64,000 nucleotides of DNA from the IMG/VR virus record IMGVR_UViG_3300049855_000348, positions 124,001 through 188,000 of that record. One strand, 5' to 3'. Within the stretch, counting starts at the first letter, position 1, and every line of letters starts with the position of its first letter. Positions 9,101 to 63,793 of the stretch are shown piece after piece. Under the pieces are notes generated by a model. It had not been told where the DNA came from, did not search any database, and saw nothing but the letters and a program-made list of their open reading frames with translations. The position numbers and the translations under genes are program-made.

Positions 9101-12100
9101 TCGGAATAGTTGAAATCGAAATAGCTGGTCGATGTCAGAACACCCGACGTGTCGATGGACATCGTGAGCGTCGAACTGCCTGGCATGAATCCGATGCCAG
9201 CGGTGGAACGGAATCCCATGGCATCCGCAGAAATGGCCCCTCCACCGCCAGACACAGCGGAGTAGTGGCCGAAGATAATAGGTGCCGTTCCACTCCTATA
9301 GAAAAGCTGATAAACGCCATTTGCCGAAGTAGAATCGACCTTGAAGATTTCTGAGTTCGCACCGCCCGACAACGTCAGCTTGCCGCCAGCGAAAATGTTT
9401 CCGCCACCGATCGCCACAGAAGTAGCCGCGACACCATTGCCAATAGTGATCGAACCAACAGTAGAACTCGTTGCTGAAGTAGTCTCTGGGAAATTGATGT
9501 GCGTGACAGTCGAGCCAGAACGAACGGCTTCAAAGGCAATCGAAGCGGTGTTCAAAGCATCGTTGAGAGCACGCAGTACGAACGTACCCGAAGAGGTTGC
9601 GTACGAATCCCAGAACCGATTGTCTACTGTGGCACCTCCATGATTCCAAGAGATACGCGGTGCAGATCCCTGAATCGTCAGTGCAATGTCGGAAGTAGAA
9701 CCAGAGATATAACTTCCACCACCGGCGTGGATACCGTTTCCAACAAAGAGATCTCCGTTGATGCCAGCACCACCAGTGACAACAAAAGCACCAGTGGTGG
9801 TAGAGGTGGAGGTGGTGCTGTTATCCACCAACACACTGTTCGACCCAGCGGTACCGGCGATAATATGCAGATTTCCATTTGTTTGTGAGATATATGAATT
9901 GAATGCTATGCTATCGGTAAACTGCAAAGTCGTATCGGCACCACTACCATTTGAGGCAATACGATGGATGATATTCGCACGAAGAGTCGTGCTAGTGGCG
10001 TTGACCTCATACACATTCAAACGACTTGTGGTGGAGGATAGAGAAACGTTCGGATCAACACCGATACGGACAAACAAAGAACCAATCGCAGCACCAGCAA
10101 CGATATTACCACCGCCGATACCAACGTTGGTTCCAACAGTTGAACCGTCACCGATATTGACAGCACCGGTAAGTGTTGTGGTAGAGGCTGTGGTACTTCT
10201 AATGGTGACCGTCTGTCCGGTGGTCTTGGCCACAGTGAAAGTGCTGTCAGCACTTACCGCAAGCAAACCATCACTAGCAGCGATGGGCAATGTACTTCCT
10301 ACCGTGACACGGAAGTCTGTTCCCGTGGGAACGCCGATGTAAATGTGGCCAGTAGAGAAAAATGTAGCGCCATCAACACTTCCAGGAGCCGGACCACTGC
10401 TGTGCGTGATGGTGCGCTGCGTACCACTGAATTCGATGCTGGTATTGACGGTCAGCAGTGATCCATCAAACGTCAGATTCGCCGATCCCTGAATCGTGTT
10501 TGCTCCGGATCCAAACGCGACTTGGTTGACTGCGATCGTACCACCGATGATGCCAGCAGCAGACAACGTCGAGTTCACCCACAGTGTGCCGTTGTAGCGA
10601 AGAAGATCACCGGTCGTAGGTGAGGTGATCGTGACATCCGAGATGTTGGTCAGAGCCGGCAGAACATCAACATTCACCAGGATCTTACCAAGCGTCGGGT
10701 GTGCTCTGGCAACGGTACCGATTCGGATCTGATTCGCTGGTGACGTTGGTTGCGTGGCAGTCAATGTTCCAGAAGTCGTGAGCCACAACATATCACCATC
10801 TGAAAATGCCGACGTGTTGACATCGCTGGCAATTCCACTGGTGACAACATAGCCATCCGAGTTGTTGGCGATGGGGACCGTCACGATACCGATGGAGCGG
10901 AAGCCAGTGGAGTTGGCGTTGGTGGCCAACGTGATATTTGGCCTGAAACCAGTCGCACCCGAGATGTAGACGACCTTTCCAGCCGCAATGGTTGAGCCGG
11001 TGCTATTTCTGACCAAGGCAACCGATTCTTGCCCCATGTGAACGACCTGCACGTCGTTCCAGTAAGTCATGGCGTTCTGGTCTGAATCGTAGTAGAATCG
11101 GCCCTCTGACAGAGCCGGAACCGAGGCACCGGTGTCCAATTGTCCGTAACGGAAGCTGACAGCCTTGGAGGTCGAATTGAAGGTGAACGTTGCGTCACCG
11201 GCAAGCGTGTCGAGAGCACTACCGTAGCCAATCTGAGTGGCTGCAAGAGTACCCAGAATCGTACCAGTTCCTGCCGGCAGATCCGCAGCCACCAAGGCTC
11301 TGAACGTTGGAACCGCTAAACCACCACTGGTTGGGCCAGCGAAGACAAGGTTGGCAGCCTGATTCGTCAGCGTGCCAGTCAACGTTCCCGAGGTGGTGAC
11401 TGGCGAGCCAGAGACCGAGAAGATCGACGGGAGTGACAGTCCAACCGAGGTGACCGTGCCACCACCTCCACCAGCACCGACAGCAACCCAGCCAGTGTTC
11501 CCAGCGCCGGATTCCTTGACGTAGAGAGTGGTCGACGTGCCGCCATCGGTACGCTGGAAGATGTCACCAACAGAACCAGTGACGACACCCTCAGGAGTGC
11601 CAGTGCCACGCTTGATGTTTTTGGCGATGATGACGCCGGCAGCGTTGGTAAAGTCCGTGCCATCGAAGGTCAGATTCGCCGAACCCTGAATGGTGTTCGT
11701 GCCCAGGCCGAAGGCCACCTGATTGGCTGCGATCGAGCCACCGATTGAGCCACCAGCACCGGCATCGAGTTGAACGGTCACACCACCACGGCGAGCGAAG
11801 ACACCAGTCGACTCAACCCAGAAGTCACCATCCTGAGGAGTCGAAGGGGCAGCACTCTGAGCGATGTTCAGACCGCCACGAGTTGCAGAAGAGTTGGCAA
11901 GGACACGACCAGAGACCTGTGCATCGCCGGTGATCTCGACGCCATTGACCGACACCGCCAAGCGGTCAGTACCCATGACAACCGTGACCATTTTCTCGGC
12001 AGCAACAGTGCGGTCGAAGTAGAAACCGATACGACTCGGCCCGCTATGAGCTTCGAGCCAGGACTTGTCGCCATCCGCCTGCGGAGCGGCAAAAGCGAGG

Positions 12101-12162
12101 TAGGAGTTGTCACCAAGGACAACCGAGCGGAAACCCGTATCTCCCATCCATGATTGTTTCAT
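178..12162 (-). CDS. Giant (3994 aa) repeat-built tail fibre / adhesin-like virion protein
   Basis: Uninterrupted 12-kb ORF, very rich in G/S/T/A. It contains recurrent modules GTIGGSIAxNQVAxGSGxNTIxGSA, PHGTAPSSPxxGDxWTT, STxTxTGAxVxxGGxGI and ASTExxDxxFxxxRTVQWATGALTTQRA, of the kind seen in long phage fibres. It sits in the late region. Confidence 0.8.
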   Translation of the reverse strand: MKQSWMGDTGFRSVVLGDNSYLAFAAPQADGDKSWLEAHSGPSRIGFYFDRTVAAEKMVTVVMGTDRLAVSVNGVEITGDAQVSGRVLANSSATRGGLNIAQSAAPSTPQDGDFWVESTGVFARRGGVTVQLDAGAGGSIGGSIAANQVAFGLGTNTIQGSANLTFDGTDFTNAAGVIIAKNIKRGTGTPEGVVTGSVGDIFQRTDGGTSTTLYVKESGAGNTGWVAVGAGGGGGTVTSVGLSLPSIFSVSGSPVTTSGTLTGTLTNQAANLVFAGPTSGGLAVPTFRALVAADLPAGTGTILGTLAATQIGYGSALDTLAGDATFTFNSTSKAVSFRYGQLDTGASVPALSEGRFYYDSDQNAMTYWNDVQVVHMGQESVALVRNSTGSTIAAGKVVYISGATGFRPNITLATNANSTGFRSIGIVTVPIANNSDGYVVTSGIASDVNTSAFSDGDMLWLTTSGTLTATQPTSPANQIRIGTVARAHPTLGKILVNVDVLPALTNISDVTITSPTTGDLLRYNGTLWVNSTLSAAGIIGGTIAVNQVAFGSGANTIQGSANLTFDGSLLTVNTSIEFSGTQRTITHSSGPAPGSVDGATFFSTGHIYIGVPTGTDFRVTVGSTLPIAASDGLLAVSADSTFTVAKTTGQTVTIRSTTASTTTLTGAVNIGDGSTVGTNVGIGGGNIVAGAAIGSLFVRIGVDPNVSLSSTTSRLNVYEVNATSTTLRANIIHRIASNGSGADTTLQFTDSIAFNSYISQTNGNLHIIAGTAGSNSVLVDNSTTSTSTTTGAFVVTGGAGINGDLFVGNGIHAGGGSYISGSTSDIALTIQGSAPRISWNHGGATVDNRFWDSYATSSGTFVLRALNDALNTASIAFEAVRSGSTVTHINFPETTSATSSTVGSITIGNGVAATSVAIGGGNIFAGGKLTLSGGANSEIFKVDSTSANGVYQLFYRSGTAPIIFGHYSAVSGGGGAISADAMGFRSTAGIGFMPGSSTLTMSIDTSGVLTSTSYFDFNYSDNSDILAKIQNYLGGTTSRAGLQLVGALGYNTSIFLTSDTYAALPALTTVYDVSGTRAFFSCVTASLASNRFLDADSSAGTVISGSLYKWTFGNKVTTIASASGGAGFNLPHGAVPSSPVDGDLWTTTTAAFVRINGATVQLGSGTIGGSIASNQVAYGSGTNTITGSANLTWNGSTLGLTGAISQGMTITDPGADVSPFLSDVTMVLTANNANRVMNRAIVRTSANAFNYTAAIGLRAVYGSVIHAGTGTVTGAVAGNFDIAVTAAGNMTNAFTIRAGGVSISAAGVIATARGIYLGAPQISGGGAITTYNALEIEPISGAGTNRAIYTQGAGLVVISDTTDASAIGTASVVLSGGLSVAKQLRTGGAVTVLMNGSLGSPAVTSGALYLEATGTTFNPALVCYDTVNLVEVAVGSFAGTAVVGTVTAHALNLRTTNANRLTIAAGTGDSSFTSTTASTNTSTGAVVIAGGLGVAGAANVGTVMGVGTSASASYILNLSASNSLTGTTQGGNIVFVRGSSAATTMVVGVSVAAATQNSAFTCNDVVTLLASPIVQGGASTITRVHQLALVDPNAGTNRAYLTISATTSPAVYTGSYAIYSASTYGSSFAGLVSILDSTDAGYTAGAAALFVAGGLAAAKTIRSTLTTAATNTITGALIIGDQTTAVTNVGIGGGNIYAGGRIFLTDGGAVGTPAYSFITNNTSGITYASGVAICEAGTRIATFANGAVTFSTAAPTTFQNTTASTSTSTGAVIISGGVGISGDAFVGGGVHARGGSYTTGATSDALITVQASIPRLGLNNGAATANNRFWDVLASSAGVFVIRAVDDALSVATSVLEATRSGSTVTVVNFPETTSATSSTVGSVTVGNGVAATNVAIGGGIIIAGTDPGGSNSVRAPSFCAANLLDFRGASQIKQINAYGTGDLELVTRTAGDAIKIYTGNGALAATFGSTQQLTVVSTIIAPAATTSISSVRLPHGTAPSSPTNGDVWTTTAGMFAQINGSTVGPFGAGGGTIGGSIASNQVAYGSGANTIQGSANFTYDGTTATIAGRMGIGGAGSSLNIIAIGATNPLSGVGQTAVGITLTGTSGGTSAVVGVSVSLGTSAVAYTASVVAGVQVLAHSLGSTSTITRAIGAYLADQTVGTNNATLLIGPSSTGFTGTYAIYSGNTNPSLFSGSVLTSASSTSRAGLNIPHGTAPSSPTDGDLWTTSAGGLFARINGVTVNYTAGGGTIGGSIASGQVAFGSGTNTIQGSATLTYTATTGLTLAPTAVATGVQTAFLVTGAANTNMTASTEVPDVNFNFARTVQWATGALTTQRAFLVQAPTYAFVGASTITTAATFAISGAPTAGTNATITNRYAFWVMNGISSFGAQVLLSGSQGVVTGSTAMLDIAPTSAAGNGTPRLVRVVGTPNTGITASTEVPDIDFSLNRTVQWATGTLTTQRAFLIQAPTYAFVGVSTINTAATFAITGAPASGSNAIINNAYTMWAQSGRSQFDGQVGFGGQQVSATTGQLEIAPSVAATSGTPKLIQVTAPANTGLSASSEVIDVLFGLGRAVQWATGNITSQRAFVITAPIYSFVAASTITNAATFAITGAPVASTNATITNTYALWVQAGISNFDDSVYFRGPHRSGTLGQVHIAPTASGVGTPKLLVIVGAASTGNTASTEVPDVDFNLSRTVQWSTGALTTQRAFVIRAPTYAFVGASTITTAATLSVTGAPAAGTNATITRGYAIRVEAGQYGGPNGSASLPTYSVGPTSNDTGMYNAGGAVGLSATGTQVLTASTSSVQAFVPYVALDGSASAPGITFTSPGNSTGIYYTDGIGFSYVGIGGMTIGGSASQTKGIVDIVSQSYSSAATADFRVAAGAHTAQTASTEASSIIFDLSATKTWAGGALTTQRAFRIAAPTYAFVSSSTITNAATVAISGAPAAGSNATITTSYALWIESGLLGTAASTTTVAGLRVPHGTAPSSPTNGDVWTTTAGMFARINGTTVGPFGSGGGTIGGSIAADQLAIGSGTNTISGSADLTYTVNGGLVFNRPAVSGGAPVAFSLNCANHTNNAASTEVNDVRWDFLRTVQWATGALTTQRAFRILQPTYAFVGASTITTAATVSIGGAPVAGTNATITTSVALDIESGLLRTAASTTSVSGFRLPHGTAPTSPVNGDVWTTTSGLFARINSSTVGPFGSGTIGGSISAEQIAFGSGVNTIQGSSELLYSSIDGLTLAPTAQGSGTPETFTIIGAANGAATGNTASTEVSDVNFALNRSVRWAAGTLTTQRFFSIKAPTITFASASTATTAATVAIDNAPQAGTNATITNAYALWVQAGNTRLQGNLTVTGTATLSTASISTLADISSTSGQANFYSATSVTVSDSNFVIAGNVAPGKQLNFQVDNHTGNTLTTFDTGAQTSSRTFTLPVVTGNDTFVTRGMTQTLSGINTFSNTTASTNKTSGAVVISGGVGIAGRVYLDTIFINPAAIASGTAANMLAIRFDGAAHTLTPASTELLDAWFNLARTVQFATTTPTTQRAVLISAPTYACSGAGQIITTAATFAIEGPAAAGTNVTITNPYALWVQSGKTQLDGPVTTGGTLTVNTDALIAGNGVGGKGGTLTSQTSGAWTFNCAIVGTIHNQGGAGQGAGGWSITQSAGTAAGGGTPMLRLIGGAHTGALASTEYNSVLFNFSATQQFNTGALTTQRCVLIMAPTYGFVGASTITTAATFAIDNAPAAGTNATLTNSYALWVQAGRSQFDGSIRITQPAGTGSPQQAFIILGGAHTSLTASTEIHDVNFSLDRTVQWATGAITTQRAFVVAAPTYAFVGTSTITSAATFAITGAPVAGTNATLTNSYALWVQAGRSQFNGAVLSNNATAGIGYSTGAGGAVTQITSRTTGVTLNTVAGAITLFTVAPTLNAWVSFTVTNSAVAATDTIVVSVKSGTNTYIACVSAVAAGSFRITFASIAGTASDAPVINFAVVKAVAA
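542..607. repeat. 66-bp perfect direct repeat, copy 1 (copy 2 at 869-934)
   Basis: aactgcgaacgaccagcctgcacccagagagcgtaggagttggtcagggttgcattggtaccagcg is identical at both positions, compared base by base. Confidence 0.95.
869..934. repeat. 66-bp perfect direct repeat, copy 2
   Basis: Identical to 542-607; offset 327 nt (109 codons), so in frame. Confidence 0.95.
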
Positions 12163-12172
12163 GACTTACCTA
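12163..12172 (-). promoter_or_regulatory. Candidate late promoter TAGGTA-agtc-ATG of the giant fibre gene
   Basis: Same TANNTA + 4 nt + ATG geometry as upstream of 15751, 23218, 38020 and 63296. Confidence 0.5.
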
Positions 12173-19113: not shown

Positions 19114-21003
19114 TTACTGTCCCAGGCTCAGATCATCTTCCGCACCGGCTGGGGCTGGCTGGCCGCCAGGAACACCCTGGTCGCCTTCAGCGCCGGCTTC
19201 GTCACCACCCTTGTCGCCGATGGTGCTCATGTCGTCGAGATTTTCGTCGCCCATCTCATCTTCGGCGTTGGCTTCGTCCTGATCGGTCTTGTCCTTGCCG
19301 ACGGCGTCGAAGTAGTCGCCGATGACCTGGAGCATGGAGGAGATGTCGTCGCCGGTGAGTTCGGGCTGTTCGCCACCTTCACCGTCAGCAGTTCCATCCA
19401 CCTTGGCCTTGAGGTCGTTGAACTCATCCGAGTCTTCGATCTCGTCGCCGACCACGTCGAGGACCTTCTTCAGCATCTCACGGGCACGATCGGCTGACAT
19501 CGAGAAGGAGATCTGCTCACCTTCGTCGTCGCCACCCTCGTCGTCCATGCTGGTGAGATCTTCGTCGCCACCGAGATCATCTTCACCTTCGCCATCGGCG
19601 TCGGTCATGCCTTCGGTGCTCTTGTCATCGTTCAGATCGTCGCTGCCGAGGTCATCGGCGGCACCGAAGTCGAAGTCTTCAGCTTCGAGGAACAGGTGAT
19701 CAAGCTGCGTGCTGATCGGCAGTTTCTGCGACTTGATGGCTTCCGAGATCTCGTTGTCACCGATGCTGACCAGGAACTTATCCTTGGCAGCCTTGCCGTC
19801 CTTGGTCTCGCCTTCGGCGACGATGGCCTTGGCCACGGTGCGGATGTCGGCGGGATCGAAGGCGTCGATGTGCGGAGCGATGGCCTCGTAGACCTCGTCT
19901 TCCGTGAGCAGGGCCAGGAACGGCGCATGCTCGACGATCGCGGCGGCGGTCGACTGGTTCTTGATGAGGGCGGCGGTCTCTTCGGTGACCGGATCGGCAC
20001 GGAACGACTTCCAGGCCACAGCGGCACGGTAGTAGAAGTCCTTCTTCGGATCGAGGGTTTCCTTGATCGTCTTCAGATTGACGACGACGATACCTTCGTC
20101 GGTCTTCTTCTCTTCCTTGTCGTCCTTCTTGTCCTCGCCGTCCTTCTTCTCTTCCTTGTCGTCGTCCTTCTTCTCGCCCTTGTCCTTCTTGTCGTCCTTG
20201 TCGTCTTTCTTGTCATCGTCCTTCTTCTCGCCGTCCTTGTCGTCTTCCTTGTCCTTGAGGAAGGCCGGCTTGTCGTCGCCATCCTCCTCTTCGGCGATGG
20301 AGACGAGGACCGCAGCGCCCTTCGGACGCATGACGGTCGGGACGCCGAGTTCATTCTTCTCGACGATGAAACCTTCGATGAGCGGATCACGCTTCGAGAG
20401 ATCCAGGGTGGCCATCATGGCGACGGCAGCTTCGAGCAACGGAGCCAGCTTCTTGCCGATCTCCTTGCCTTCGTGGATCTTCTTGCGCAGGGCCGACGCC
20501 TTCTTGAAGACGAGGGTCTTGGCCGACTTCTTGGCTTCCTGGATGAGACGCCAGCGGGCGGCGGTCGACTCCTTCAGGTAGCGGGCACGACTGGCCGCGC
20601 CTTCCTTTTGCTCGACCATCTTGACGGCACCAACGGCTTTGGTCTTCATCTCCATGACCATGCCGATGAGCTTGCTGGCTTCATCTTCCTGGTCTTCGGC
20701 GACGAGGTCGACGAACTTGGCGGCGATCTCGTCGAGGAAGCTGGTGTTGTTCGCCTCCTCGGAGATGTTCATCAGGCGACGGCAGTCGGTCAGTGCGACC
20801 CGTCCTTCGCTGATGGTGTAGTGGGCGACGAACAGGTTGGCTTCACCATCGGCGAAGGCCACGCTGCTTTCGCTCACAGCGATAATCTTGTGGCTGGCAC
20901 CTTTATGGGCCGACCACACGCCCAAGGCGAGGTCCAGTTGCTCACGGATCACCGCCTCAGAGCCGGCGTCGATCTTTTCCAGGATGTTGCACAGATGGCG
21001 CAT
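19114..21003 (-). CDS. Large acidic prohead scaffold-like protein (629 aa)
   Basis: Occupies the gp67/68 position between portal and protease; very acidic C-terminal half and a KDDK-type charged repeat. Confidence 0.7.
   Translation of the reverse strand: MRHLCNILEKIDAGSEAVIREQLDLALGVWSAHKGASHKIIAVSESSVAFADGEANLFVAHYTISEGRVALTDCRRLMNISEEANNTSFLDEIAAKFVDLVAEDQEDEASKLIGMVMEMKTKAVGAVKMVEQKEGAASRARYLKESTAARWRLIQEAKKSAKTLVFKKASALRKKIHEGKEIGKKLAPLLEAAVAMMATLDLSKRDPLIEGFIVEKNELGVPTVMRPKGAAVLVSIAEEEDGDDKPAFLKDKEDDKDGEKKDDDKKDDKDDKKDKGEKKDDDKEEKKDGEDKKDDKEEKKTDEGIVVVNLKTIKETLDPKKDFYYRAAVAWKSFRADPVTEETAALIKNQSTAAAIVEHAPFLALLTEDEVYEAIAPHIDAFDPADIRTVAKAIVAEGETKDGKAAKDKFLVSIGDNEISEAIKSQKLPISTQLDHLFLEAEDFDFGAADDLGSDDLNDDKSTEGMTDADGEGEDDLGGDEDLTSMDDEGGDDEGEQISFSMSADRAREMLKKVLDVVGDEIEDSDEFNDLKAKVDGTADGEGGEQPELTGDDISSMLQVIGDYFDAVGKDKTDQDEANAEDEMGDENLDDMSTIGDKGGDEAGAEGDQGVPGGQPAPAGAEDDLSLGQ
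20100..20290 (-). repeat. Low-complexity K/D/E repeat coding tract (DKEDDKDGEKKDDDKKDDKDDKK...)
   Basis: Repeated gtc/ctt triplets visible on the plus strand. Confidence 0.85.
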
Positions 21004-21030
21004 GGGTTGCCTCAGGGTTTATCTACGGAT

Positions 21031-23010: not shown

Positions 23011-23218
23011 TGGTAGCCACCTTCGGGAGCACGCCCTTCTGGTCCGCCAGCGATCCCGGACGGGACGCCTTCATGATACGATCCATCAGGCGCTCAGCCG
23101 GATCACGGCGTTCAGCACGACGAACCTTGGACTTCATCTTCGGACCATGGGAGATCCGACGACTGGCCTTCTTGACCGCCGAGGCGAAACGACTGTTGAC
23201 TGCTCCGGTCAGATCCAT
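23003..23218 (-). CDS. Small basic hypothetical protein (71 aa)
   Basis: ATG preceded by gcTAGATA-ggcc; 8-nt overlap with the portal start. Confidence 0.7.
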   Translation of the reverse strand: MDLTGAVNSRFASAVKKASRRISHGPKMKSKVRRAERRDPAERLMDRIMKASRPGSLADQKGVLPKVATNG

Positions 23219-23271
23219 GGCCTATCTAGCAGACCTCCTGAGGGTAACGATTTACGAGCATACATACTTCG

Positions 23272-37564: not shown

Positions 37565-37570
37565 GTCCAC

Positions 37571-37598
37571 AGTATAGCGACTAAAAGGTCGCTGTCAA
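37571..37598 (-). promoter_or_regulatory. Sigma70-type promoter TTGACA-16-TATACT with a perfect GCGAC-N6-GTCGC palindrome as its spacer
   Basis: Minus strand TTGACA GCGAC CTTTTA GTCGC TATACT gtggac ATG. Confidence 0.9.
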
Positions 37599-37602
37599 CA
37601 CC

Positions 37603-37686
37603 CTATCCGAACAGCGCCTTGAGGCGGAACAGGAAGCTCGGCTTCGTGACGGGGTAGCGGCCAGCGGAGTTTGAGGTGTTACGCAC
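37603..37686 (-). CDS. Possible micro-protein (27 aa, MRNTSNSAGRYPVTKPSFLFRLKALFG), not in ORF track
   Basis: GTG start with AGGA 7 nt upstream; codons typical of this genome; fills an intergenic gap. Confidence 0.4.
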   Translation of the reverse strand: MRNTSNSAGRYPVTKPSFLFRLKALFG

Positions 37687-41845: not shown

Positions 41846-44800
41846 TCATACCGGTTTGATCGCCCAGGAGGTCTGCTCATCGACCATGGTGGCCACGATG
41901 GTACCAGCACGGCTGGAACCCGGCACATCGGCGTGGGTGATGACGAAGATCCGCTTCACCCGATTGACCATGGAAGCGATCAGATCCTGCACGGCACGGC
42001 GACCCTTCACGTCGAGGGCGTCGAAGACTTCGTCGAGGGCCAAGAAGCCGGCACGGTGCCGAGAACGCTGACGGGCCAACTCGAAGATCGAGAATAGCGC
42101 AGCCAGATCGGTCCACTTGCGCTGACCGCCTGAGCGCCGGCCATACCGTTCCTGGTAGGTCAGATCCGAGTTGAAGGTGAGGGTCATCTTCCCGCCGAAG
42201 TGTTGTCCGATGTAGGACTGGACGACGAGATTGAGTTGTTTCACGCTCTGGTCAAGCAGGAAACCCCTCATGGAGCCCTTAGCGGCAAAAGCCTTGTCCC
42301 AGAACGTGATGTAAGCCGATTTCAGGTCCAGGGCATGCGCCTGAGCCTTTGAGGTTTCCATCGCAGCGAACGCAGCCTGTCGGTCGGCGACCAAACGGTC
42401 CTTGGCGATCTTCAGAGCGGCAGCCGGGTCGGTGGCGGTGAGGTTGCGCTCCTCTTGAGCCAGGGCCGCCTCGGTAGCGGCTCCACCAGCCTCCAGGGCC
42501 GACTTTTCTTGCAGGAGGGCCGAGAGTTCCCCGGTGAGGCGTTTGTGCTCATCCTGAGCCTTCTGGAGGGCTTCTTTGGCCGAGACGAGATCCGTCACCG
42601 CCTGTGATGCCAGGATCAGATCGGCCTTGGTCCGGTAGGCACTCATGATGGCAAGTAGACCGTCGAGGATCCGCTGGAAGCCGGAGGCAGTGATGATGTC
42701 CTCCAGCCTCTCCGGCATGGGCAGGCACTGGTTGGCCTGTTCTGCGAATCGAGCATCGACCTGCTGCCGGCGTACGGCGATGGCCTGCAACCGAGCTTCC
42801 ATGTCCGGCAGGGACTTGGTCAGCGTTTCGAGCACGGTCTTGGCCGCAGCCAACTGGGCCAGGGTGGCGAGACCCTTGAGGGATTCATCAGCCTGAACTC
42901 GCAGTGCCTGGGCTTCGCTGATGAGTTTGGTCTGTTCGGCTTTGTAGGTCCGGTACCCTGCTCGCAGGCTCTCCAACTCAGCGTTGAGACCCTTCACCAC
43001 GTTGACCATCGATTCGCCATTGATCGAAGTCAGACACGTCGGGCAGTCACCACCAGTGGTGAGCTTTGAGAGCTTTTCAGCCTTCTGTGAGATCGGCGTT
43101 GCTTGCGTGGTGGTGGCCTCGGCCTTCGCACCTTCAGCCGCAGCCAACTGATCTTTCTGTGTTGCCTCTTGGCGGAGGACGTTGGCACGTTCATTGGCAG
43201 CAACCACTGCCGCTTCCTGTTTCAGTGCCGCTTCGAGACCAGTGATGCGATCACGAACAGTGCCGATCTCCGACTTGAGGATGTTCTCCTCGTTGGTGAT
43301 GTTGTTGTGATCGATGCAGCGGGAATTCCAAAGCGATTGAAAGCGAACGATGTTCTTGTTGGTCTCTTCCGCCTTGTCGACGTTGGCCTTCGCCTCGACA
43401 CGGATCGCCTCGACACCACCAGAGAGTAGTTGGACCTTCTCGGTCGCAGCCTTCACCACATCGTTGCTGTACTGAATAGTCTGCTCACCACTGGCTTCTG
43501 CATACATCAAACGTTCGCGTTCTTGACGCATCTTGACCTGATGGTCGTTCTTGCGCTGGGCCACTGAACTCAACATCACCTGATGATTCTTTTCAGCGTC
43601 GAGGATCTGCGTTTCGATGGCAGAGATCTGCGCTGCTGAGCGTTCGATTTCACCAGCACGAACCTTCTGAATGTTGGCCTGTTGTTCGAGTTGATCACTC
43701 ATGAGTTTCTTCAACTCACGAGTCTTCTCCAGGTAAGCGTCGAAGCGTTCGAGACCCAGCATCTCTTCGATCATGGCACGACGTTTCTTCTCGTCTCCGG
43801 TCATGAAGTTGGCCGTCACGTTTTGGCCCATGATGTAGGAACGACTGTAGGTCTCACGGTCGATGCCGATGAGATCGATGATCATCTTCTGGGTAGCTTT
43901 CGGATCACCCTTCTCGAATGACTCTTGATAGACGCCATCCTTGTAGACCTTCACACCAGTACCGCCGAGGTCGTGGTACTTGCGGAAGCGTTCGATGCTC
44001 CAGCCGTTGGCATGGTTCACCCGAACGTAGCAGTTCTTCCCCTTGCCGGTGAACTGAGGGTCGTAGACCACATCGTCAGCCTTCATCTCATCACGGATGG
44101 TCTCGCCGAAGTAGCACCAGAAGATAGCTTCGAGGAACGTGCTCTTGCCGGCACCGTTCTCACCTTCGAGGTACCACACGCCTGGACGCAGGTCATCAAA
44201 ATTGATGGTGATCTTTTCCTTCACACCAAGGAAGCCCTCAAGAGTCAGGCTGGAGACTTCACCATCGAAAGCCATGCCACCCTTTTCGGCATCTTGGAAA
44301 CGTGAATTCACCTCAGCGATGATCGATTTGCCGAACTGGATGGTGATGTCCACATCCAATTGACTATCGCCAGTGATGACCGACTTCACGAAGGGCTCGA
44401 CGAGGCCAGCGGCGGAGGTGGCTTCAACACCGAGGACTTCAACCTCCTGATCACGAATCGCTTTCTCGATGACCGACTCTTTGCGTACCGAGATGACACC
44501 GGCAGCTTCGAGCTTCAGTTGCAGGGCTTCGTGCTGCTCATCGGTGACGAGGTCGTCATAGATGACAGTGACGAAGCAGTCCTTGAGTGTGGTCAGATCC
44601 TGCGGCAGATCGCTGACACCGAGAACCTTGAAGGCATCGTGGTGTGGATTGAGGATGAACCGGTCGTTACCGGTATCCATGTCGAGGACCATGATACCAC
44701 GCTGGTCACCGGCATCGCCGAAATTGAACTGGAGGGGTGAGCCGCAATAGGTCACCCGGTGATCCATGCGCTGGAAGACGTGGAAGTGGCCAGAGTAGGT

Positions 44801-45337
44801 GGCCTTGAATGGGGCGAACACGTCGGGACCGACAGCACCAGAGAAGGTGGTCTTGTAGCGGGTGTTCTGTACCGCACCGTTGATGCCGAGGTGACCGAAC
44901 ACGGTCATCTTGGCGGCACGCTCGGGGAACTGCCGGGCGAAGTCCTGCACGAAGGCGACGATCTTCGACTGGTCTTCGTAGTAGGGGATGAACAGGAAAT
45001 GATCACCTACCGGGGTGATCTCACGGAAGACCTTGATCTTCGGATGCATATCCAGTCCGTCGAGACTGCTGACGGAGGTAGAATGCTTGAGGTTGAGATC
45101 GTGGTTGCCCAGGGTGAGGAACACCGGCCACTTGTCGGCGAGCTTGCGAAAGAAGTTGATGGCAGCCGACTGGCTGACCACATCGACCGCTTCACGGGTA
45201 ACCAGGGCATCACCCATGCAGACGACGGCCTGCACGCCTTGTCGTTGGAACTCTTCAATGATCCAGTCGCCGGTTTTGATGATGCGATCCAGCCCCTGTG
45301 GCTGGAAGTGGATGTCAGAGAAGATTCCAAGTTGCAT
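41846..45337 (-). CDS. Fused Mre11/SbcD (gp47-like) nuclease + Rad50/SbcC (gp46-like) ATPase in one ORF
   Basis: Metallophosphoesterase motifs SDIH, MGD, GNHD, GH and GHFH, then Walker A GENGAGKS, coiled coil with CPTC hook, signature SGGQ, Walker B LDEVFDALD and VITH; no intervening stop. Start 45337 or 45340. Confidence 0.93.
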   Translation of the reverse strand: MQLGIFSDIHFQPQGLDRIIKTGDWIIEEFQRQGVQAVVCMGDALVTREAVDVVSQSAAINFFRKLADKWPVFLTLGNHDLNLKHSTSVSSLDGLDMHPKIKVFREITPVGDHFLFIPYYEDQSKIVAFVQDFARQFPERAAKMTVFGHLGINGAVQNTRYKTTFSGAVGPDVFAPFKATYSGHFHVFQRMDHRVTYCGSPLQFNFGDAGDQRGIMVLDMDTGNDRFILNPHHDAFKVLGVSDLPQDLTTLKDCFVTVIYDDLVTDEQHEALQLKLEAAGVISVRKESVIEKAIRDQEVEVLGVEATSAAGLVEPFVKSVITGDSQLDVDITIQFGKSIIAEVNSRFQDAEKGGMAFDGEVSSLTLEGFLGVKEKITINFDDLRPGVWYLEGENGAGKSTFLEAIFWCYFGETIRDEMKADDVVYDPQFTGKGKNCYVRVNHANGWSIERFRKYHDLGGTGVKVYKDGVYQESFEKGDPKATQKMIIDLIGIDRETYSRSYIMGQNVTANFMTGDEKKRRAMIEEMLGLERFDAYLEKTRELKKLMSDQLEQQANIQKVRAGEIERSAAQISAIETQILDAEKNHQVMLSSVAQRKNDHQVKMRQERERLMYAEASGEQTIQYSNDVVKAATEKVQLLSGGVEAIRVEAKANVDKAEETNKNIVRFQSLWNSRCIDHNNITNEENILKSEIGTVRDRITGLEAALKQEAAVVAANERANVLRQEATQKDQLAAAEGAKAEATTTQATPISQKAEKLSKLTTGGDCPTCLTSINGESMVNVVKGLNAELESLRAGYRTYKAEQTKLISEAQALRVQADESLKGLATLAQLAAAKTVLETLTKSLPDMEARLQAIAVRRQQVDARFAEQANQCLPMPERLEDIITASGFQRILDGLLAIMSAYRTKADLILASQAVTDLVSAKEALQKAQDEHKRLTGELSALLQEKSALEAGGAATEAALAQEERNLTATDPAAALKIAKDRLVADRQAAFAAMETSKAQAHALDLKSAYITFWDKAFAAKGSMRGFLLDQSVKQLNLVVQSYIGQHFGGKMTLTFNSDLTYQERYGRRSGGQRKWTDLAALFSIFELARQRSRHRAGFLALDEVFDALDVKGRRAVQDLIASMVNRVKRIFVITHADVPGSSRAGTIVATMVDEQTSWAIKPV

Positions 45338-45343
45338 CATCTC

Positions 45344-45371
45344 ATCCTAGCGACATTTTGGTCTAAGTCAA
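45344..45371 (-). promoter_or_regulatory. Sigma70-type promoter TTGACT-16-TAGGAT with a TAGAC-N6-GTCGC spacer
   Basis: Minus strand TTGACT TAGAC CAAAAT GTCGC TAGGAT gagATGATG; the second ATG is 6 nt from the -10 hexamer. Confidence 0.85.
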
Positions 45372-45670
45372 ATGGACAGCGGCTTGCCCGCCAGCACGTC
45401 ATTTAGGGTCCAACGAGACCTCATCACTTTTTATCACACGTTCTCGTCTGATGGGGATTACCCGTGTGGTACCTGGGAATCTAGTCCCTTGGCGGTTAGA
45501 GCCACCGGCTCGATCTACGTCTGATGTGAGGATTGAATTACCCCAGCATTTCAACTACTCGGATCAGGAGTCACCGTCCCGGCTTCGCGTAGCCTCGAAA
45601 TGCCGAGGTTTCCGGCTTGGCTACCATATCGGTGAAGTTTGGTGGGCTACCGACGCTCCCACCAGGAATC
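45372..45670 (-). ncRNA. About 300-nt non-coding, hairpin-dense segment; candidate structured RNA or cis element
   Basis: No credible ORF; at least six short stems and a duplicated GGGTAAT...CATCAGACG unit. No known RNA family recognised. Confidence 0.35.
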
Positions 45671-60515: not shown

Positions 60516-61118
60516 ATGACCAAAGAACAACAATCTGTCGATGTCGAGTGCAAGCATGAGGTGGTCAACTACTCCATCCCGGCGATCTGTGCCAAGTGTG
60601 GTGCGCAGGTCGACGAGGGTATCGTAGCGGTGAAACTCTCAGACCTACCTGCCGACAAACAAGCCACGATTGCAGAACTCGCCCATGGTCTGCCTGACGT
60701 GGAGATCGGAGATGTCGAGTCGACTCCGGCTGCCATCAACATGCGTCGGCCACTCAAGATCCGTGCCGGTATCGAAAGAAAGCCCGCCAAGGCCGATTCC
60801 AAACCCTCAGAAGGCAAGAAGCCAGCCAAGGGAGCCATCACCAAGATCGAGGCTCTAAACGCCAAGGAACGCATCTTCGTGGTCAACGGGGTGAAGTTCT
60901 ATGCCGCCGTGACCGACTCCGGCTTCCGGGTGCTCGCTGCCTGCCATGAGTCGAAGAAGACCCTGGAGTCGGCTGCTCGGGTGCTGGAGATCAAAGGCTG
61001 GATCCCGAAGGTCAAACGCTCGAAGGACGACAAGAGTCTGTTCTCGCTGGAAGCCAAAGAGAAGCGCCCGTCCGGCCCCTGGCCTGATGAGGACCCAGTC
61101 GAAGAGAAGAAAGCCTAG
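60516..61118 (+). CDS. Hypothetical protein (200 aa) with N-terminal C-x-H...CxxC
   Basis: ATG immediately after the upstream TGA; typical codon usage. Confidence 0.75.
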   Translation: MTKEQQSVDVECKHEVVNYSIPAICAKCGAQVDEGIVAVKLSDLPADKQATIAELAHGLPDVEIGDVESTPAAINMRRPLKIRAGIERKPAKADSKPSEGKKPAKGAITKIEALNAKERIFVVNGVKFYAAVTDSGFRVLAACHESKKTLESAARVLEIKGWIPKVKRSKDDKSLFSLEAKEKRPSGPWPDEDPVEEKKA

Positions 61119-61486
61119 CCGTCTACGGTCACCTCGGTGATCCGCTTGGTCGGGTCCTCGGCGAAGTGCCAGACTGGCTGCTTGCCCGGGATCTCTTCTT
61201 TACAACTCAAACACCGGATGACGAGGGTGTAGCGCAACGGGGATCGTTTGGTCGAAACGATGTGGCAATCGTGGGTATAGATTGCGAGCCCTTGGCGTGG
61301 TCGGATGAAGGCGACGCTATGCCCCAGCCGACCAGGGGATGGGAATCGATGTAGGAACACCTTGCGGAAGCTCCTCTGTGAGACGATCTCGACAATGAGG
61401 ACTCCATGACCGGAGGTATCATCGTACTGGGTGATCTCCCAGGACAGACTGTCACACCGGTGAAATTTCCACTTACCGCCACTCAT
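61115..61486 (-). CDS. Hypothetical beta-rich protein (123 aa)
   Basis: Downstream of a palindrome-containing promoter; shares a CTAG stop palindrome with the 60516 gene. Confidence 0.6.
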   Translation of the reverse strand: MSGGKWKFHRCDSLSWEITQYDDTSGHGVLIVEIVSQRSFRKVFLHRFPSPGRLGHSVAFIRPRQGLAIYTHDCHIVSTKRSPLRYTLVIRCLSCKEEIPGKQPVWHFAEDPTKRITEVTVDG

Positions 61487-61516: not shown

Positions 61517-61566
61517 ACAATAGCGATCAAAATGTCGCTTGATTTTGAAGTCTGATTTGGTACACT
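61517..61566. promoter_or_regulatory. Divergent promoter pair around a GCGAT-N6-GTCGC site
   Basis: Leftward: palindrome followed by TATTGT (-10). Rightward: TTGATT (61539) -16- TACACT (61561) -6- ATG 61573, with the palindrome abutting its -35. Confidence 0.75.
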
Positions 61567-61572
61567 GCGGGC

Positions 61573-61683
61573 ATGTTCAAACTCCCCATCCTGGCAGTCC
61601 TCCTCATCGCCACCTTCGCCTGCGGTCTCTACGTGGGCCACAAGCTCGGCTTCGCCCACGCGCAGAAGATCCAGACCAAGTGA
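61573..61683 (+). CDS. 36-aa single-TM micro-protein (MFKLPILAVLLIATFACGLYVGHKLGFAHAQKIQTK), not in ORF track
   Basis: Leaderless geometry (6 nt after TACACT); GTGA overlap with the next gene; hydrophobic helix. Confidence 0.75.
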   Translation: MFKLPILAVLLIATFACGLYVGHKLGFAHAQKIQTK

Positions 61684-62069
61684 GTAAGCCGGTTCAGGTC
61701 TATGATGGCAATGGGTTATTCGATAACGAATACTTCATAGCCAAAGAGTCGACCAAGATCGTCCTCGAACTGAAGGGATTGTTGATCGCACTTGAACGAT
61801 ATGCCAAGATGGGTGTTCGCAGAAAAGACGTTCACGGACACGATCTCGAACCACTGGATCCGGAAGAAATCTCACAAATTATAGAAAGCGCCAAAGCGGT
61901 TTATGATTGGCTGAATGATTTTGAACCTTACGAACTAGCGGCACCCGTCATTTATAGACTCGGCTTCCTTGCTGGGGAGTGTGTGAAGAAAGGATTCAAT
62001 CCGTTTGCAGCCCAACTCCATCAGCTTGTCGGCGGAATGAGTAAGATCCATGAATCACGCCGTCATTGA
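61680..62069 (+). CDS. Hypothetical protein (129 aa, MSKPVQVYDGNG...)
   Basis: GTG start overlapping the micro-protein stop; first of three genes sharing an N-terminal motif. Confidence 0.75.
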   Translation: MSKPVQVYDGNGLFDNEYFIAKESTKIVLELKGLLIALERYAKMGVRRKDVHGHDLEPLDPEEISQIIESAKAVYDWLNDFEPYELAAPVIYRLGFLAGECVKKGFNPFAAQLHQLVGGMSKIHESRRH

Positions 62070-62472
62070 TGTCGTTCAAGTCTACGAGGGTGACGGTGTC
62101 AAACCGCCACGACGGAAAATCGTACGTCCTCCGAAGCCGTTCGAGAACGAAGGGAAGTTTCGGATCACCATCAATGATATCACGTTCATCATCAACTATA
62201 AGGTCCAAGAGTTCAAACAACATGGTGTGGTGACGAGTCAAAACGTTGCTGTGACCGGTTGCGGTTTTGGCGGAGTCTTCACCTCCAGTGATCTCAAATT
62301 ACAGGAACCGGTGAAGATCAGACAGGTCATGGTCGGCAAACAAAAAGTGCAGACCTACCTGTGGGATCTCGATGTTCTCATGATCACACGTATGACGCTT
62401 GAACGCTTCGGCGATCACCTCGCCAAGCATGCAGCCCACAAGAAAAAATACTACAAGAAGAGGACATGGTGA
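62050..62472 (+). CDS. Hypothetical protein (140 aa, ...VQVYEGDG...)
   Basis: Operon-coupled; shared N-terminal motif. Confidence 0.75.
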   Translation: MNHAVIDVVQVYEGDGVKPPRRKIVRPPKPFENEGKFRITINDITFIINYKVQEFKQHGVVTSQNVAVTGCGFGGVFTSSDLKLQEPVKIRQVMVGKQKVQTYLWDLDVLMITRMTLERFGDHLAKHAAHKKKYYKKRTW

Positions 62473-63167
62473 TGGAGATCCAGTGCTATGATGGTGATGG
62501 AGTTGAGCCATTATACGTTCGTCAGAAACGCGAAGCCGAGGAGGCTCGCTATCGCAGGCGTGTTGAGCAGGTTGGTCTGCGTCTGGCAAATCGTGAGCGC
62601 CGTGAACGCCATCGTTCAGAGCGTCAGAAGGCCAAGCCCATCGTTCGTTGTGAACGATTCGAGATGCGACGTGTCGGCAACAAGACCCATTTCCACATCA
62701 AGTCGACTGATCACCCAACCAAGCTGATCTTCTTCGCCGGTGACCATTTCAGGGAGATGACCTTTCGTTACCCTTCCTACGATGATGTCAGAGACCCCAT
62801 GCGGATGCCGGTGGTCCTCAGGGCTGTCAACGTGAAGGTCCTCCAGATGCATGCCGTCGAACCCATGGGTTCTGACGATGACACTCCGTTGTTCTATGAG
62901 ACTTCGATCACCATCGAATCAGACACCCTCATCAACGAGTCGGCCAAGGTTTACAAAGCCTTCCGAGACTCTATCTGTCTCCCCATTCCAACCCTGAAGG
63001 GCACTCATGGCTCAATACAGCCTGGGCAAGTGGCGTCATCCGAAGACCGAGCAGATTCGGATCTACCTCAACGGCCTCGACAGCACCGAGCAAAAGGTGT
63101 GGTTCGAGAGGGGGGAGCGAAAAAACGACCAGCTTCCGCCCGAGTTCGGCATCAAGCTGTGTTGTGA
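62472..63167 (+). CDS. Hypothetical protein (MEIQCYDGDG...); the last 54 or so residues overlap the next gene
   Basis: TGATG overlap at the start; shared N-terminal motif; 161-nt 3' overlap is suspicious. Confidence 0.65.
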   Translation: MEIQCYDGDGVEPLYVRQKREAEEARYRRRVEQVGLRLANRERRERHRSERQKAKPIVRCERFEMRRVGNKTHFHIKSTDHPTKLIFFAGDHFREMTFRYPSYDDVRDPMRMPVVLRAVNVKVLQMHAVEPMGSDDDTPLFYETSITIESDTLINESAKVYKAFRDSICLPIPTLKGTHGSIQPGQVASSEDRADSDLPQRPRQHRAKGVVREGGAKKRPASARVRHQAVL

Positions 63168-63288
63168 AAACACGGTAACGCTGACCAAGCAGGAGGTTGT
63201 GGAGGAGATCGCCGAGGCGTTCTCCGAGATGGACCTCTTCCTCGACAAGACCACCTGGAGCCGCCTGGGAAGGGCTGCTAGCTGGTAA
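63007..63288 (+). CDS. Hypothetical protein (93 aa)
   Basis: GAAGGG SD; typical codon usage. Confidence 0.75.
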   Translation: MAQYSLGKWRHPKTEQIRIYLNGLDSTEQKVWFERGERKNDQLPPEFGIKLCCENTVTLTKQEVVEEIAEAFSEMDLFLDKTTWSRLGRAASW

Positions 63289-63295
63289 CTAAGTC

Positions 63296-63793
63296 ATGCC
63301 GGTCACGCTCCCATCCCCGATCCTCTACAGCGCCCTGACCATGCTTCAGGACACGGATGAGAACGTCATCCTCCAGCGCCTGTACGACCGTGATGAAGCC
63401 CTACTGGCCGCCTTCAACGCCCTCAACGACATCCGTGAAGACCTGATTGCCCAGTTCTCCCGCTTCGACGATATCGAAGCCCGTATCCGCTCGATCGGCA
63501 ACATCATCAACGCCATCATCGCAGCGTTCTATCAGGACATCGACGGTAACGGCATCGTTCCGGACAACTACGCCTTCTTCAACCAGTTGATCGCCGACCT
63601 GAAGTTGAACATCAATGCGATCAACGCCGTCAGTGGTGGCATCATCAACTTCCTTGGTGTTCAGACCGCTGTGACGCCGGTTGCTGAGCATCTGGCCCGT
63701 CTCCAGGGGCTCGACAATCTGATCAAGGAAAAGTTGAACTACATCTACAGCAAGTGGGACATCGATCCGAACGACGATCTACTCTCGCTGTGA
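63296..63793 (+). CDS. Helical hypothetical protein (165 aa) with a DxDxNG loop
   Basis: TAACTA-agtc-ATG start; heptad-like helices around QDIDGNGIV. Confidence 0.75.
   Translation: MPVTLPSPILYSALTMLQDTDENVILQRLYDRDEALLAAFNALNDIREDLIAQFSRFDDIEARIRSIGNIINAIIAAFYQDIDGNGIVPDNYAFFNQLIADLKLNINAINAVSGGIINFLGVQTAVTPVAEHLARLQGLDNLIKEKLNYIYSKWDIDPNDDLLSL

What the first reader, a model, noticed from the sequence alone, without database searches (positions are those of the whole stretch)
61680..62501. Three consecutive, otherwise dissimilar genes share an N-terminal [VI]-Q-[VC]-Y-[DE]-G-[ND]-G motif
VQVYDGNG (61692-61715), VQVYEGDG (62074-62097) and IQCYDGDG (62478-62501) lie within the first 16 residues of each protein. 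The codons differ, so conservation is at protein level, and I see no similarity in the rest of the proteins. This looks like a shared short linear tag: a common docking peptide for one host or phage hub (polymerase, clamp, protease), an export or packaging signal, or a modification site. I know of no described system with this motif.
Basis: partly seen in the sequence, partly recalled or inferred. Interest (0 to 1): 0.62.

Follow-up and report, generated by a model that had tools for sequence, protein, structure and literature searches.

The report
Shared N-terminal tag on phage proteins
A rare lineage of freshwater T4-type giant phages puts the same flexible 8-12-residue N-terminal peptide ([VI]-Q-V-[YF]-[DE]-G-D-G-V-x-P) on many unrelated small accessory proteins, which points to a common docking or targeting tag whose partner is still unknown.

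Summary
The three motifs sit exactly where stated. The 220-kb phage genome holds two more canonical copies and about six decayed ones, all at N-termini. The canonical form did not occur in 30 shuffled genomes.

Orthologues on related metagenomic contigs keep the tag while their bodies drift to 28-66% identity. Other relatives carry arrays of three to six consecutive tagged genes. The 21 tagged proteins first collected fall into 14 body families with no detectable similarity. Profile comparison aligns only the tag. AlphaFold gives different folds (an all-alpha bundle; a helix plus a beta domain), with the tag disordered.

The phage is a distant T4 relative with a gp21-type prohead protease, so the closest precedent is the T4 capsid targeting sequence. 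However, the tagged genes sit in operons led by the early-type promoter, none has the late-type promoter motif close by, and there is no consistent protease site.

My best reading (0.4) is a docking peptide that links variable early accessory proteins to one shared partner. Capsid targeting is the main rival (0.25). The partner is unidentified, and one complex prediction gave no verdict.

The parts
61522..61575 (+). Conserved hairpin (61522-61539), then a sigma70-like promoter (TTGATT 61539-61544, 16-nt spacer, TACACT 61561-61566) placed 6 nt before ATG 61573. It heads the operon that holds A, B and C.
   Evidence: The element is nearly invariant across the window, L014 and L015 (alignment A1). 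It has the same architecture as about two dozen TTGACT-N16-TATACT-N6-ATG promoters in the genome. The hairpin was listed by the terminator scan.
61573..61683 (+). Gene for a 36-aa hydrophobic peptide, first gene of the operon. It has no tag.
   Evidence: ORF list. It is conserved at 55-58% identity in L014 and L015. Its TGA overlaps the GTG start of gene A.
61680..62069 (+). Gene A, 129 aa. Tag VQVYDGNG at 61692-61715 (residues 5-12). The body is an all-alpha bundle.
   Evidence: AlphaFold model: pLDDT 89, helices 12-128, residues 1-13 below pLDDT 50. Orthologues L015_A (45-49% identical) and L014_A (28%) both carry VQVYDGDG. No Pfam or PHROG family.
62050..62472 (+). Gene B, 140 aa, basic and beta-rich. 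Tag VQVYEGDG at 62074-62097 (residues 9-16), followed by VKPP.
   Evidence: The orthologue L014_B (33% identical) has IQVYDGDGVK. No family found. A weak KlcB-like lead from the ESM Atlas (0.85).
62472..63167 (+). Gene C, 231 aa. Tag IQCYDGDG at 62478-62501 (residues 3-10), followed by VEPL. Then an Arg-rich helix, a beta domain, and a disordered tail that overlaps the next ORF (63007-63288).
   Evidence: Orthologues P0002 (VQCWEGDGVEP) and P0003 (IQCYDGDGVEPP) are 64-67% identical. A distant homologue in L020 has LEVFDGDG at 34% identity. AlphaFold model: pLDDT 67, tag disordered, residues 170-231 disordered. The beta domain weakly resembles the Hcp/tail-tube fold.

Best explanation
The motif is a modular short linear motif at the N-terminus. 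It is a four-residue beta-strand ([VI]-Q-[VC]-[YFW]), then an acidic tight turn ([DE]-G-[D/N]-G), then usually V-x-P. It sits on a flexible arm 1-9 residues from the initiator Met and is attached to many unrelated small accessory proteins of one lineage of freshwater T4-type jumbo phages. I propose that it is a docking peptide. Each tagged protein would use it, probably by beta-strand addition, to bind one common partner (a host or phage hub) soon after infection. The fast-evolving bodies would then bring different activities or targets to that partner, as in an adaptor system serving host takeover or counter-defence. Shown here: the motif exists, it is strictly N-terminal, it is selected at the protein level, it is kept in orthologues, the bodies are unrelated, the tag is disordered in the models, and the tagged genes lie in early-type operons. 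Inferred: that the tag binds anything, what the partner is, and what the bodies do.
For: There are five canonical tags in the genome, all within residues 2-16, and none in 30 shuffles. It is the only significantly shared N-terminal peptide in the proteome. The tag persists in orthologues of A, B, C and E while the bodies fall to 28-66% identity, or below blast detection for E. The 21 tagged proteins collected through fall into 14 body families. hhalign aligns only the tag. A is an all-alpha bundle and C is a helix plus a beta domain, and the tag has pLDDT below 50 in both. Synonymous sites vary freely, and the substitutions Y/F/W and D/E are conservative. Tagged genes form arrays: five in a row on L051, three on L043, five or six within 4 kb on L187. 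Their neighbours look like counter-defence genes: a Lar-like gene in L015, NADAR in L187, and YAcAr and DUF1643-like genes next to the window's locus. The A-B-C operon, and those holding D and E, start at the sigma70-like promoter class that also heads the helicase and SbcCD-like genes. The candidate late promoter CTAGATAA, found before the tail sheath, the portal operon and a head gene, is absent from the A-B-C and E operons.
Against: No partner has been identified. The tag matches no bacterial linear motif that I know (clamp-binding, SSB-tail, degron or TonB/TolB boxes; judged from memory, not tested). The timing inference rests on promoter motifs, not on expression data. The strictly N-terminal position is not required of a simple docking peptide, and would fit a targeting signal, a degron or a packaging signal at least as well. 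The body functions are unknown, so the adaptor logic is conjecture.
Confidence: 0.4

Rival explanations
1. The tag is a capsid or virion targeting sequence, the functional equivalent of the T4 CTS. It would bind the scaffolding core of the prohead, so that a variable set of small proteins is packaged and injected with the DNA, for example to disarm host defences at once.
For: The phage is T4-type. Its major capsid protein matches phrog_138 at 4e-47, and a Peptidase_S77 (gp21-type) prohead protease and a gp22-like scaffold lie between the portal and the capsid gene. T4-type phages are the one group where unrelated small proteins are known to share a 10-19-residue N-terminal peptide, and that protein set is hypervariable (PMC9026906, PMC3012670). 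The size range (65-239 aa), the clustering and the counter-defence-like neighbourhood all fit. In T4, targeting is separable from cleavage, and an Asp at the cleavage position still allows targeting.
Against: There is no sequence similarity to MKTYQEFIAE. No [LIV]-x-E site lies at a fixed place after the tag (my reading of the sequences). The distance from Met varies from 1 to 9 residues. The isoelectric points are mixed rather than uniformly basic. The genes lie in early-type operons, and no late-type motif occurs in the A-B-C or E operons. The complex prediction of two scaffold copies with A scored 0.00, which the tool counts as no evidence either way.
Confidence: 0.25
2. The tag has no common partner. 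It would be a relic of common ancestry: extremely diverged paralogues whose N-terminus happens to be the slowest-evolving part, or a segment serving folding, stability or expression within each protein.
For: Arrays of similar-sized small genes such as those on L051 could arise by tandem duplication. A graded series of decayed tags exists (g040, g045, g052, g084, g212, g248).
Against: The predicted folds differ. The tag is not packed against the body in either model. Profile comparison finds nothing beyond the tag. The tag is far better conserved than the orthologous bodies, which implies selection on the tag itself. An RNA-level role is unlikely because synonymous sites and the offset from the start codon both vary.
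Confidence: 0.12
3. The tag drives tag-to-tag co-assembly. The beta-prone strand VQVY/VQVG would pair between tagged proteins, or with a host protein carrying a similar motif, as in amyloid-like signalling motifs (RHIM core [IV]-Q-[IV]-G; bacterial BASS motifs). It could possibly block a host amyloid-signalling defence.
For: In the Bab/Agp defence system, adjacent genes that share one short terminal motif are the hallmark of amyloid signalling (bioRxiv 10.1101/2024.11.07.622273). Variants IQVGDGIG, VQVGDGDG and IQVGSG occur. From memory, these resemble the RHIM tetrad.
Against: The conserved part is 8-12 residues and is followed by Pro, which breaks beta-structure. Known motifs span about 23-25 residues. 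All copies are N-terminal and on small proteins, not the pairing of a sensor N-terminus with an effector C-terminus. No fibril evidence exists.
Confidence: 0.08

Closest known systems
Capsid targeting sequence (CTS) of T4 internal proteins IPI, IPII, IPIII and Alt
   Same: It is a short N-terminal peptide (10-19 residues) shared by otherwise unrelated small proteins of a T4-type phage. The protein set is hypervariable between relatives and is linked to counter-defence. The present phage has the gp21-type protease and a scaffold that this system needs.
   Different: The sequence is unrelated. No consistent protease site follows the tag. The distance from Met varies. The genes lie in early-type operons without the late-type promoter motif close by. 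No virion data exist.
Amyloid signalling motifs (RHIM; fungal and bacterial FASS/BASS, e.g. Bab/Agp BASS11)
   Same: A short terminal motif is shared by products of adjacent, otherwise dissimilar genes. The core is beta-prone, and the Q-containing tetrad ([VI]-Q-V-G in some copies) resembles the RHIM core.
   Different: The tag is much shorter, is capped by Pro, is always N-terminal and occurs on many small proteins. It is not arranged as a sensor/effector pair.
N-terminal packaging signals of extracellular contractile injection system payloads, and encapsulin cargo-loading peptides
   Same: A disordered terminal peptide loads diverse cargo into one protein machine, and cargo genes are often consecutive (from my own knowledge, not tested here).
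   Different: Those signals are longer (eCIS) or usually C-terminal (encapsulins). There is no sequence resemblance, and no such machine is encoded next to the tagged genes.
NHL and FG-GAP beta-propeller repeats
   Same: The same words (RVQVYDGDGKF, ADYDGDGRADL) occur in those repeats as a strand-turn-strand hairpin. This supports a strand plus tight-turn conformation for the tag.
   Different: Those motifs are internal and repeated four to seven times within one fold. The tag is a single N-terminal copy outside the folded body.

Membership tests
T4-type capsid targeting sequence / internal proteins | The phage has a T4-type head module with a gp21-type prohead protease and a scaffolding core | tested here: met
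   PF03420 Peptidase_S77 at 1.1e-14, above the cut-off. Portal, terminase and gp23-like capsid protein. A helical 249-aa scaffold-like gene lies between the protease and the capsid gene.
T4-type capsid targeting sequence / internal proteins | A short N-terminal peptide shared by otherwise unrelated small proteins | tested here: met
T4-type capsid targeting sequence / internal proteins | The peptide ends at a prohead-protease cleavage site ([LI]-x-E in T4) | tested here: not met
   No [LIV]-x-E lies at a fixed distance from the tag in the 21 sequences (my reading). The specificity of this phage's protease is unknown, so the result is weak.
T4-type capsid targeting sequence / internal proteins | Expressed late, with the head proteins | tested here: not met
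   Judged by promoter motifs only. The tagged operons start at the early-type promoter, and no CTAGATAA (one mismatch allowed) occurs in the A-B-C or E operons. No expression data exist.
T4-type capsid targeting sequence / internal proteins | The proteins are present in the capsid and are injected | not testable with these tools
   The phage is uncultured. The only runs holding this DNA are freshwater DNA metagenomes.
Amyloid signalling motifs (RHIM/BASS) | A motif of about 20-25 residues able to form a beta-arch core | tested here: not met
   The conserved part is 8-12 residues, with Pro at position +11 in 12 of 21 copies. BASS11 spans about 23-25 residues.
Amyloid signalling motifs (RHIM/BASS) | The motif sits at the N-terminus of a sensor and the C-terminus of an adjacent effector | tested here: not met
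   All copies are N-terminal and on proteins of 65-239 aa.
Sliding-clamp binding motifs (PIP box, QL[SD]LF) | Consensus with hydrophobic or aromatic residues at the last two positions, and a clamp encoded by phage or host | tested here: not met
   The tag has D-G where the consensus needs hydrophobic residues (my reading). No gp45-family match in the genome (PF09116 and PF02916).
NHL / FG-GAP propeller repeats | The motif recurs four or more times within one beta-propeller domain | tested here: not met
   There is a single copy per protein. The A body is all-alpha. The local HMM finds one hit per protein.

The most novel reading that the evidence does not exclude
The tag defines a new phage adaptor system. 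One invariant N-terminal peptide would plug a rapidly diversifying repertoire of early proteins into a single host machine, for example a protease or unfoldase or the transcription apparatus. The phage could then swap target-binding bodies in its arms race with host defences while keeping one effector arm, a bacterial-virus counterpart of F-box-type adaptor families. A rarer version is that the tag mimics a host amyloid or beta-strand signalling motif and blocks an abortive-infection pathway.
Probability: 0.15. Interest if true: 0.85.

Novelty: new variant of a known kind. Interest (0 to 1): 0.66.

Why it matters
If the tag is a docking or targeting peptide, it is a ready-made handle. It would mark a whole set of otherwise unannotatable accessory genes as belonging to one pathway (up to 11 of roughly 260 predicted genes here, and arrays in relatives). 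It would also point to a single partner that a pull-down could identify, and it could serve as a portable tag, as the T4 CTS does. It would show that the idea of one constant peptide on many variable bodies is not confined to T-even internal proteins but recurs with a different sequence in a distant T4-type lineage. That bears on how phages diversify counter-defence repertoires.

Tried and rejected
- **Chance:** rejected.
- **RNA-level signal:** rejected, because synonymous sites and the offset from the start codon vary.
- **Full-length paralogy:** rejected at the sensitivity available. The hhalign hit between A and B (22 columns, a helix against a strand region) is spurious.
- **Pfam and PHROGs:** nothing for A to E.
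- **Megablast against phage records:** the 6-kb region found nothing.
- **IMG/VR scans:** three pattern scans gave only internal, unrelated occurrences such as tail-fibre C-termini. Relatives sought through UvsX gave none. Through the capsid protein, one 11-kb head-module contig was found.
- **Word search with D residues 1-40:** returned only D itself.
- **T4 late promoter TATAAATA:** absent from gene starts.
- **gp45 clamp families:** not found.
- **Promoter motifs in relatives:** not recognisable.
- **Foldseek of the A model:** nothing significant against PDB or BFVD. The top Smac/DIABLO row has E 0.13 and TM 0.3 and is not evidence.
- **ESM Atlas leads:** C Argonaute-N/PAZ-like at 0.88 and B KlcB-like at 0.85. 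Both are below the level at which such hits are reliable.
- **Complex prediction (two scaffold copies plus A):** score 0.00, no verdict; the tool says this counts neither for nor against binding.
- **T4 ip gene timing:** a look in a T4 omics paper found no mention.
- **Locus L054:** this metagenome hit reads like a eukaryotic Sec13-type WD40 exon. It was set aside and not compared or searched further.

Full report
**1.

A six-frame scan of the window finds [VI]Q[VC]Y[DE]G[ND]G three times only, at 61692-61715, 62074-62097 and 62478-62501. Even the five-residue pattern Y[DE]G[ND]G occurs nowhere else in the 64 kb.

The three genes are:
- **A:** 61680-62069, 129 aa. Its GTG start overlaps the TGA of a 36-aa peptide gene.
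- **B:** 62050-62472, 140 aa.
- **C:** 62472-63167, 231 aa. This ATG is the start that best fits the AAGAGGA ribosome-binding site.

All-against-all blastp finds similarity only in the first 8-14 residues. Pfam and PHROGs give nothing.

**2. The phenomenon is larger than three genes**

The window is bases 124001-188000 of a 220,489-bp virus record with direct terminal repeats and 56% G+C. The whole genome holds two more canonical copies:
- **D:** genome 28481-28858, MNEVQVYDGDGTIPL. Its ATG overlaps the upstream stop codon.
- **E:** genome 37411-37085 on the minus strand, MGLSEVQVFDGDGVIPPE, a coiled-coil protein.

All five lie within the first 13 residues, and the strict motif did not occur in 30 shuffled genomes. 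A local HMM of the tag gives five hits of at least 34 bits, and then nothing above 10 bits.

An unbiased comparison of the first 25 residues of all predicted proteins ranks tag pairs in the top 11 places. It also reveals decayed copies:
- g040: MSIQVGSGLTPP
- g045: MRSIQVGDGIG (immediately upstream of E)
- g052: MSEIQVLDG
- g084: MNNPIQVYDGG
- g212: MNSVQVNDGG (on a DUF1643-like body)
- g248: NEVQIIEGD

**3. The tag is kept in orthologues while the bodies drift**

A word search with C found two orthologues at 64-67% identity, on contigs L014 and L015. These contigs are syntenic with the window: peptide gene, A, B, C, then the next genes. Their tags are:
- A orthologues: VQVYDGDG on both contigs
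- B orthologue: IQVYDGDG
- C orthologues: VQCWEGDG and IQCYDGDG

The bodies are 28-66% identical. The exhaustive HMMER search added two E-like proteins carrying VQC[YF]DGDGVVPPE. One lies on L184 at the syntenic position. There the neighbouring genes are 45-47% identical, but the E body is no longer detectable by blast.

**4. Relatives carry arrays of tagged genes**

A metagenome scan for [VIM]QVYDGDG returned 99 stretches of DNA. Most are unrelated internal occurrences, such as NHL-type repeats and one enzyme family. A handful of phage-like contigs carry the motif at N-termini:
- **L051:** five consecutive small tagged genes.
- **L043:** three consecutive tagged genes.
- **L020/L040:** a C-like gene, a canonical tagged gene and a VQVGDGDG variant.
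- **L028:** syntenic with genome genes g011-g016, with one tagged gene.

Longer contigs of the L020 type (L187, L188) show five or six tagged genes within 4 kb, beside a NADAR gene.

Three IMG/VR scans found only internal occurrences. Among 1.84 billion representative proteins, the tag profile found 13 proteins at E of 0.001 or better. Eleven belong to this clade and are N-terminal. Two are FG-GAP-type repeat proteins. The tag is therefore specific to a rare lineage, and within that lineage it is always N-terminal.

**5. The bodies are unrelated and the tag is a free arm**

The 21 tagged proteins collected through fall into 14 body families. hhalign of the A, B and C families aligns only the tag.

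| Protein | AlphaFold confidence | Predicted body | Tag region |
|---|---|---|---|
| A | pLDDT 89 | all-alpha bundle, residues 12-128 | residues 1-13 below pLDDT 50 |
| C | pLDDT 67 | long helix plus beta domain | tag disordered |

The consensus is [VI]-Q-[VC]-[YFW]-[DE]-G-[D/N/K]-G-[V]-x-P, starting at residue 2-10. Synonymous sites vary freely, so selection acts on the protein. The same words occur in NHL and FG-GAP repeats as a strand-turn-strand hairpin. This suggests that the tag is a beta-strand plus a tight turn.

**6. Genomic context**

The phage is a distant T4 relative:
- a gp23-like capsid protein, only about 30% identical to the nearest phage record;
- portal and terminase genes;
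- a Peptidase_S77 (gp21-type) prohead protease;
- a helical scaffold-like gene.

Two promoter-like classes emerge.
- **Early-type:** about two dozen copies of TTGACT-N16-TATACT, often 6 nt before the ATG. These precede DNA-metabolism operons, including the helicase and an SbcCD-like fusion.
- **Late-type:** CTAGATAA placed 3-5 nt before the start codon. It precedes the tail sheath, the portal operon, a head gene and a 3,994-aa ORF.

The A-B-C operon has a diverged early-type promoter that is conserved in L014 and L015. D and E also lie downstream of early-type promoters. No late-type motif (one mismatch allowed) occurs in the A-B-C or E operons. One CTAAATAA lies 3.7 kb upstream of D. These timing assignments are inferences from motifs only.

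**7. Mechanism**

The data fit a modular N-terminal linear motif under its own selection. I commit to a docking peptide that links variable early accessory proteins to one shared partner (0.4).

The main rival is a T4-style capsid targeting sequence (0.25). It is attractive because this is a T4-type phage and the logic is identical (PMC9026906; PMC3012670). It is weakened by the early-type operon context, the absence of a consistent protease site, the variable offset from Met and the mixed charge of the proteins.

Two further readings are less likely:
- A relic or folding role without a partner (0.12).
- Tag-to-tag or amyloid-like co-assembly (0.08). The precedent is Bab/Agp (10.1101/2024.11.07.622273), but the tag is too short and is capped by Pro.

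One complex prediction, two scaffold copies plus A, gave no verdict.

**8. Novelty**

The sequence motif matches no Pfam or PHROG family, and outside this lineage the large searches returned only unrelated internal occurrences. The principle of one constant N-terminal peptide on many unrelated phage proteins is known from the T4 CTS. I therefore rate it a new variant of a known kind. There is a modest chance (about 0.15) that it is a new adaptor-hub system.

Noticed in passing
whole genome; in the window e.g. 37570-37610 and 45340-45380 on the minus strand, and 61539-61575 on the plus strand: There are about two dozen near-identical sigma70-like promoters, GTGTTGACTTAGACC-AAAA-GGTCGCTATACT, with a palindrome (GACC..GGTC) in the spacer. 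The start codon often lies only 6 nt after the -10 box, which suggests leaderless mRNAs.
   Followed up: partly
window 12162-12170, 21003-21020 and 23218-23226 on the minus strand; elsewhere in the genome: A second motif, CTAGATAA (or CTAGATAG, GTAGGTAA), lies 3-5 nt before the start codon of the tail sheath gene, the portal operon, a head gene and the giant ORF. It is a candidate late promoter replacing the T4 TATAAATA, which is absent from gene starts.
   Followed up: partly
window 63007-63288 (+) against 62472-63167 (+): The last roughly 55 codons of C overlap the next ORF (93 aa) in another frame. Both readings are conserved in L014 and L015. AlphaFold gives C residues 170-231 as disordered. 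This could be overprinting or a mis-set end of C.
   Followed up: partly
window 61115-61486 (-): A 123-aa Cys/His-rich ORF lies on the opposite strand, between the upstream gene and the tagged operon. It is conserved in L015 (133 aa) and is possibly a small nuclease or a mobile element.
   Followed up: no
window 178-12162 (-): A single ORF of 3,994 codons follows a late-type promoter motif. Its function was not examined.
   Followed up: no
window 41849-45340 (-): A 1,164-aa protein matches SbcD-like (residues 1-348) and SbcC-like (residues 363-1138) families. It appears to be a fusion of the T4 gp47 and gp46 equivalents.
   Followed up: partly
L015:1807-2049 and L014:~330-545: Relatives carry a Lar-like restriction-alleviation gene (PF14354), and in L015 an extra 150-aa gene, inserted between the peptide gene and A. 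The locus is therefore a site of gene gain and loss.
   Followed up: partly
window 62634-62978 (C residues 55-169): The beta domain of C weakly but consistently resembles the Hcp/tail-tube fold (Foldseek E 6e-3; VIA Z 5-6.3, rmsd about 4 A over 88-100 residues). This is below the level at which a shared fold can be claimed.
   Followed up: partly
window 63296-63793 (+): The 165-aa gene just downstream is 85% identical in L014, far better conserved than A (28%) or B (33%) on the same contig. The tagged genes therefore evolve unusually fast.
   Followed up: partly
genome 17860-22700 (outside the window, locus L004/L005): A stretch of about 4.8 kb has no predicted ORFs and ends in at least one tRNA-like sequence. 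It is probably a tRNA cluster.
   Followed up: no
L054 (metagenome contig Ga0056116_1037722): The motif hit there reads like an exon of a eukaryotic Sec13-type WD40 protein. It is unrelated to the phage tag and was set aside without further searches.
   Followed up: no
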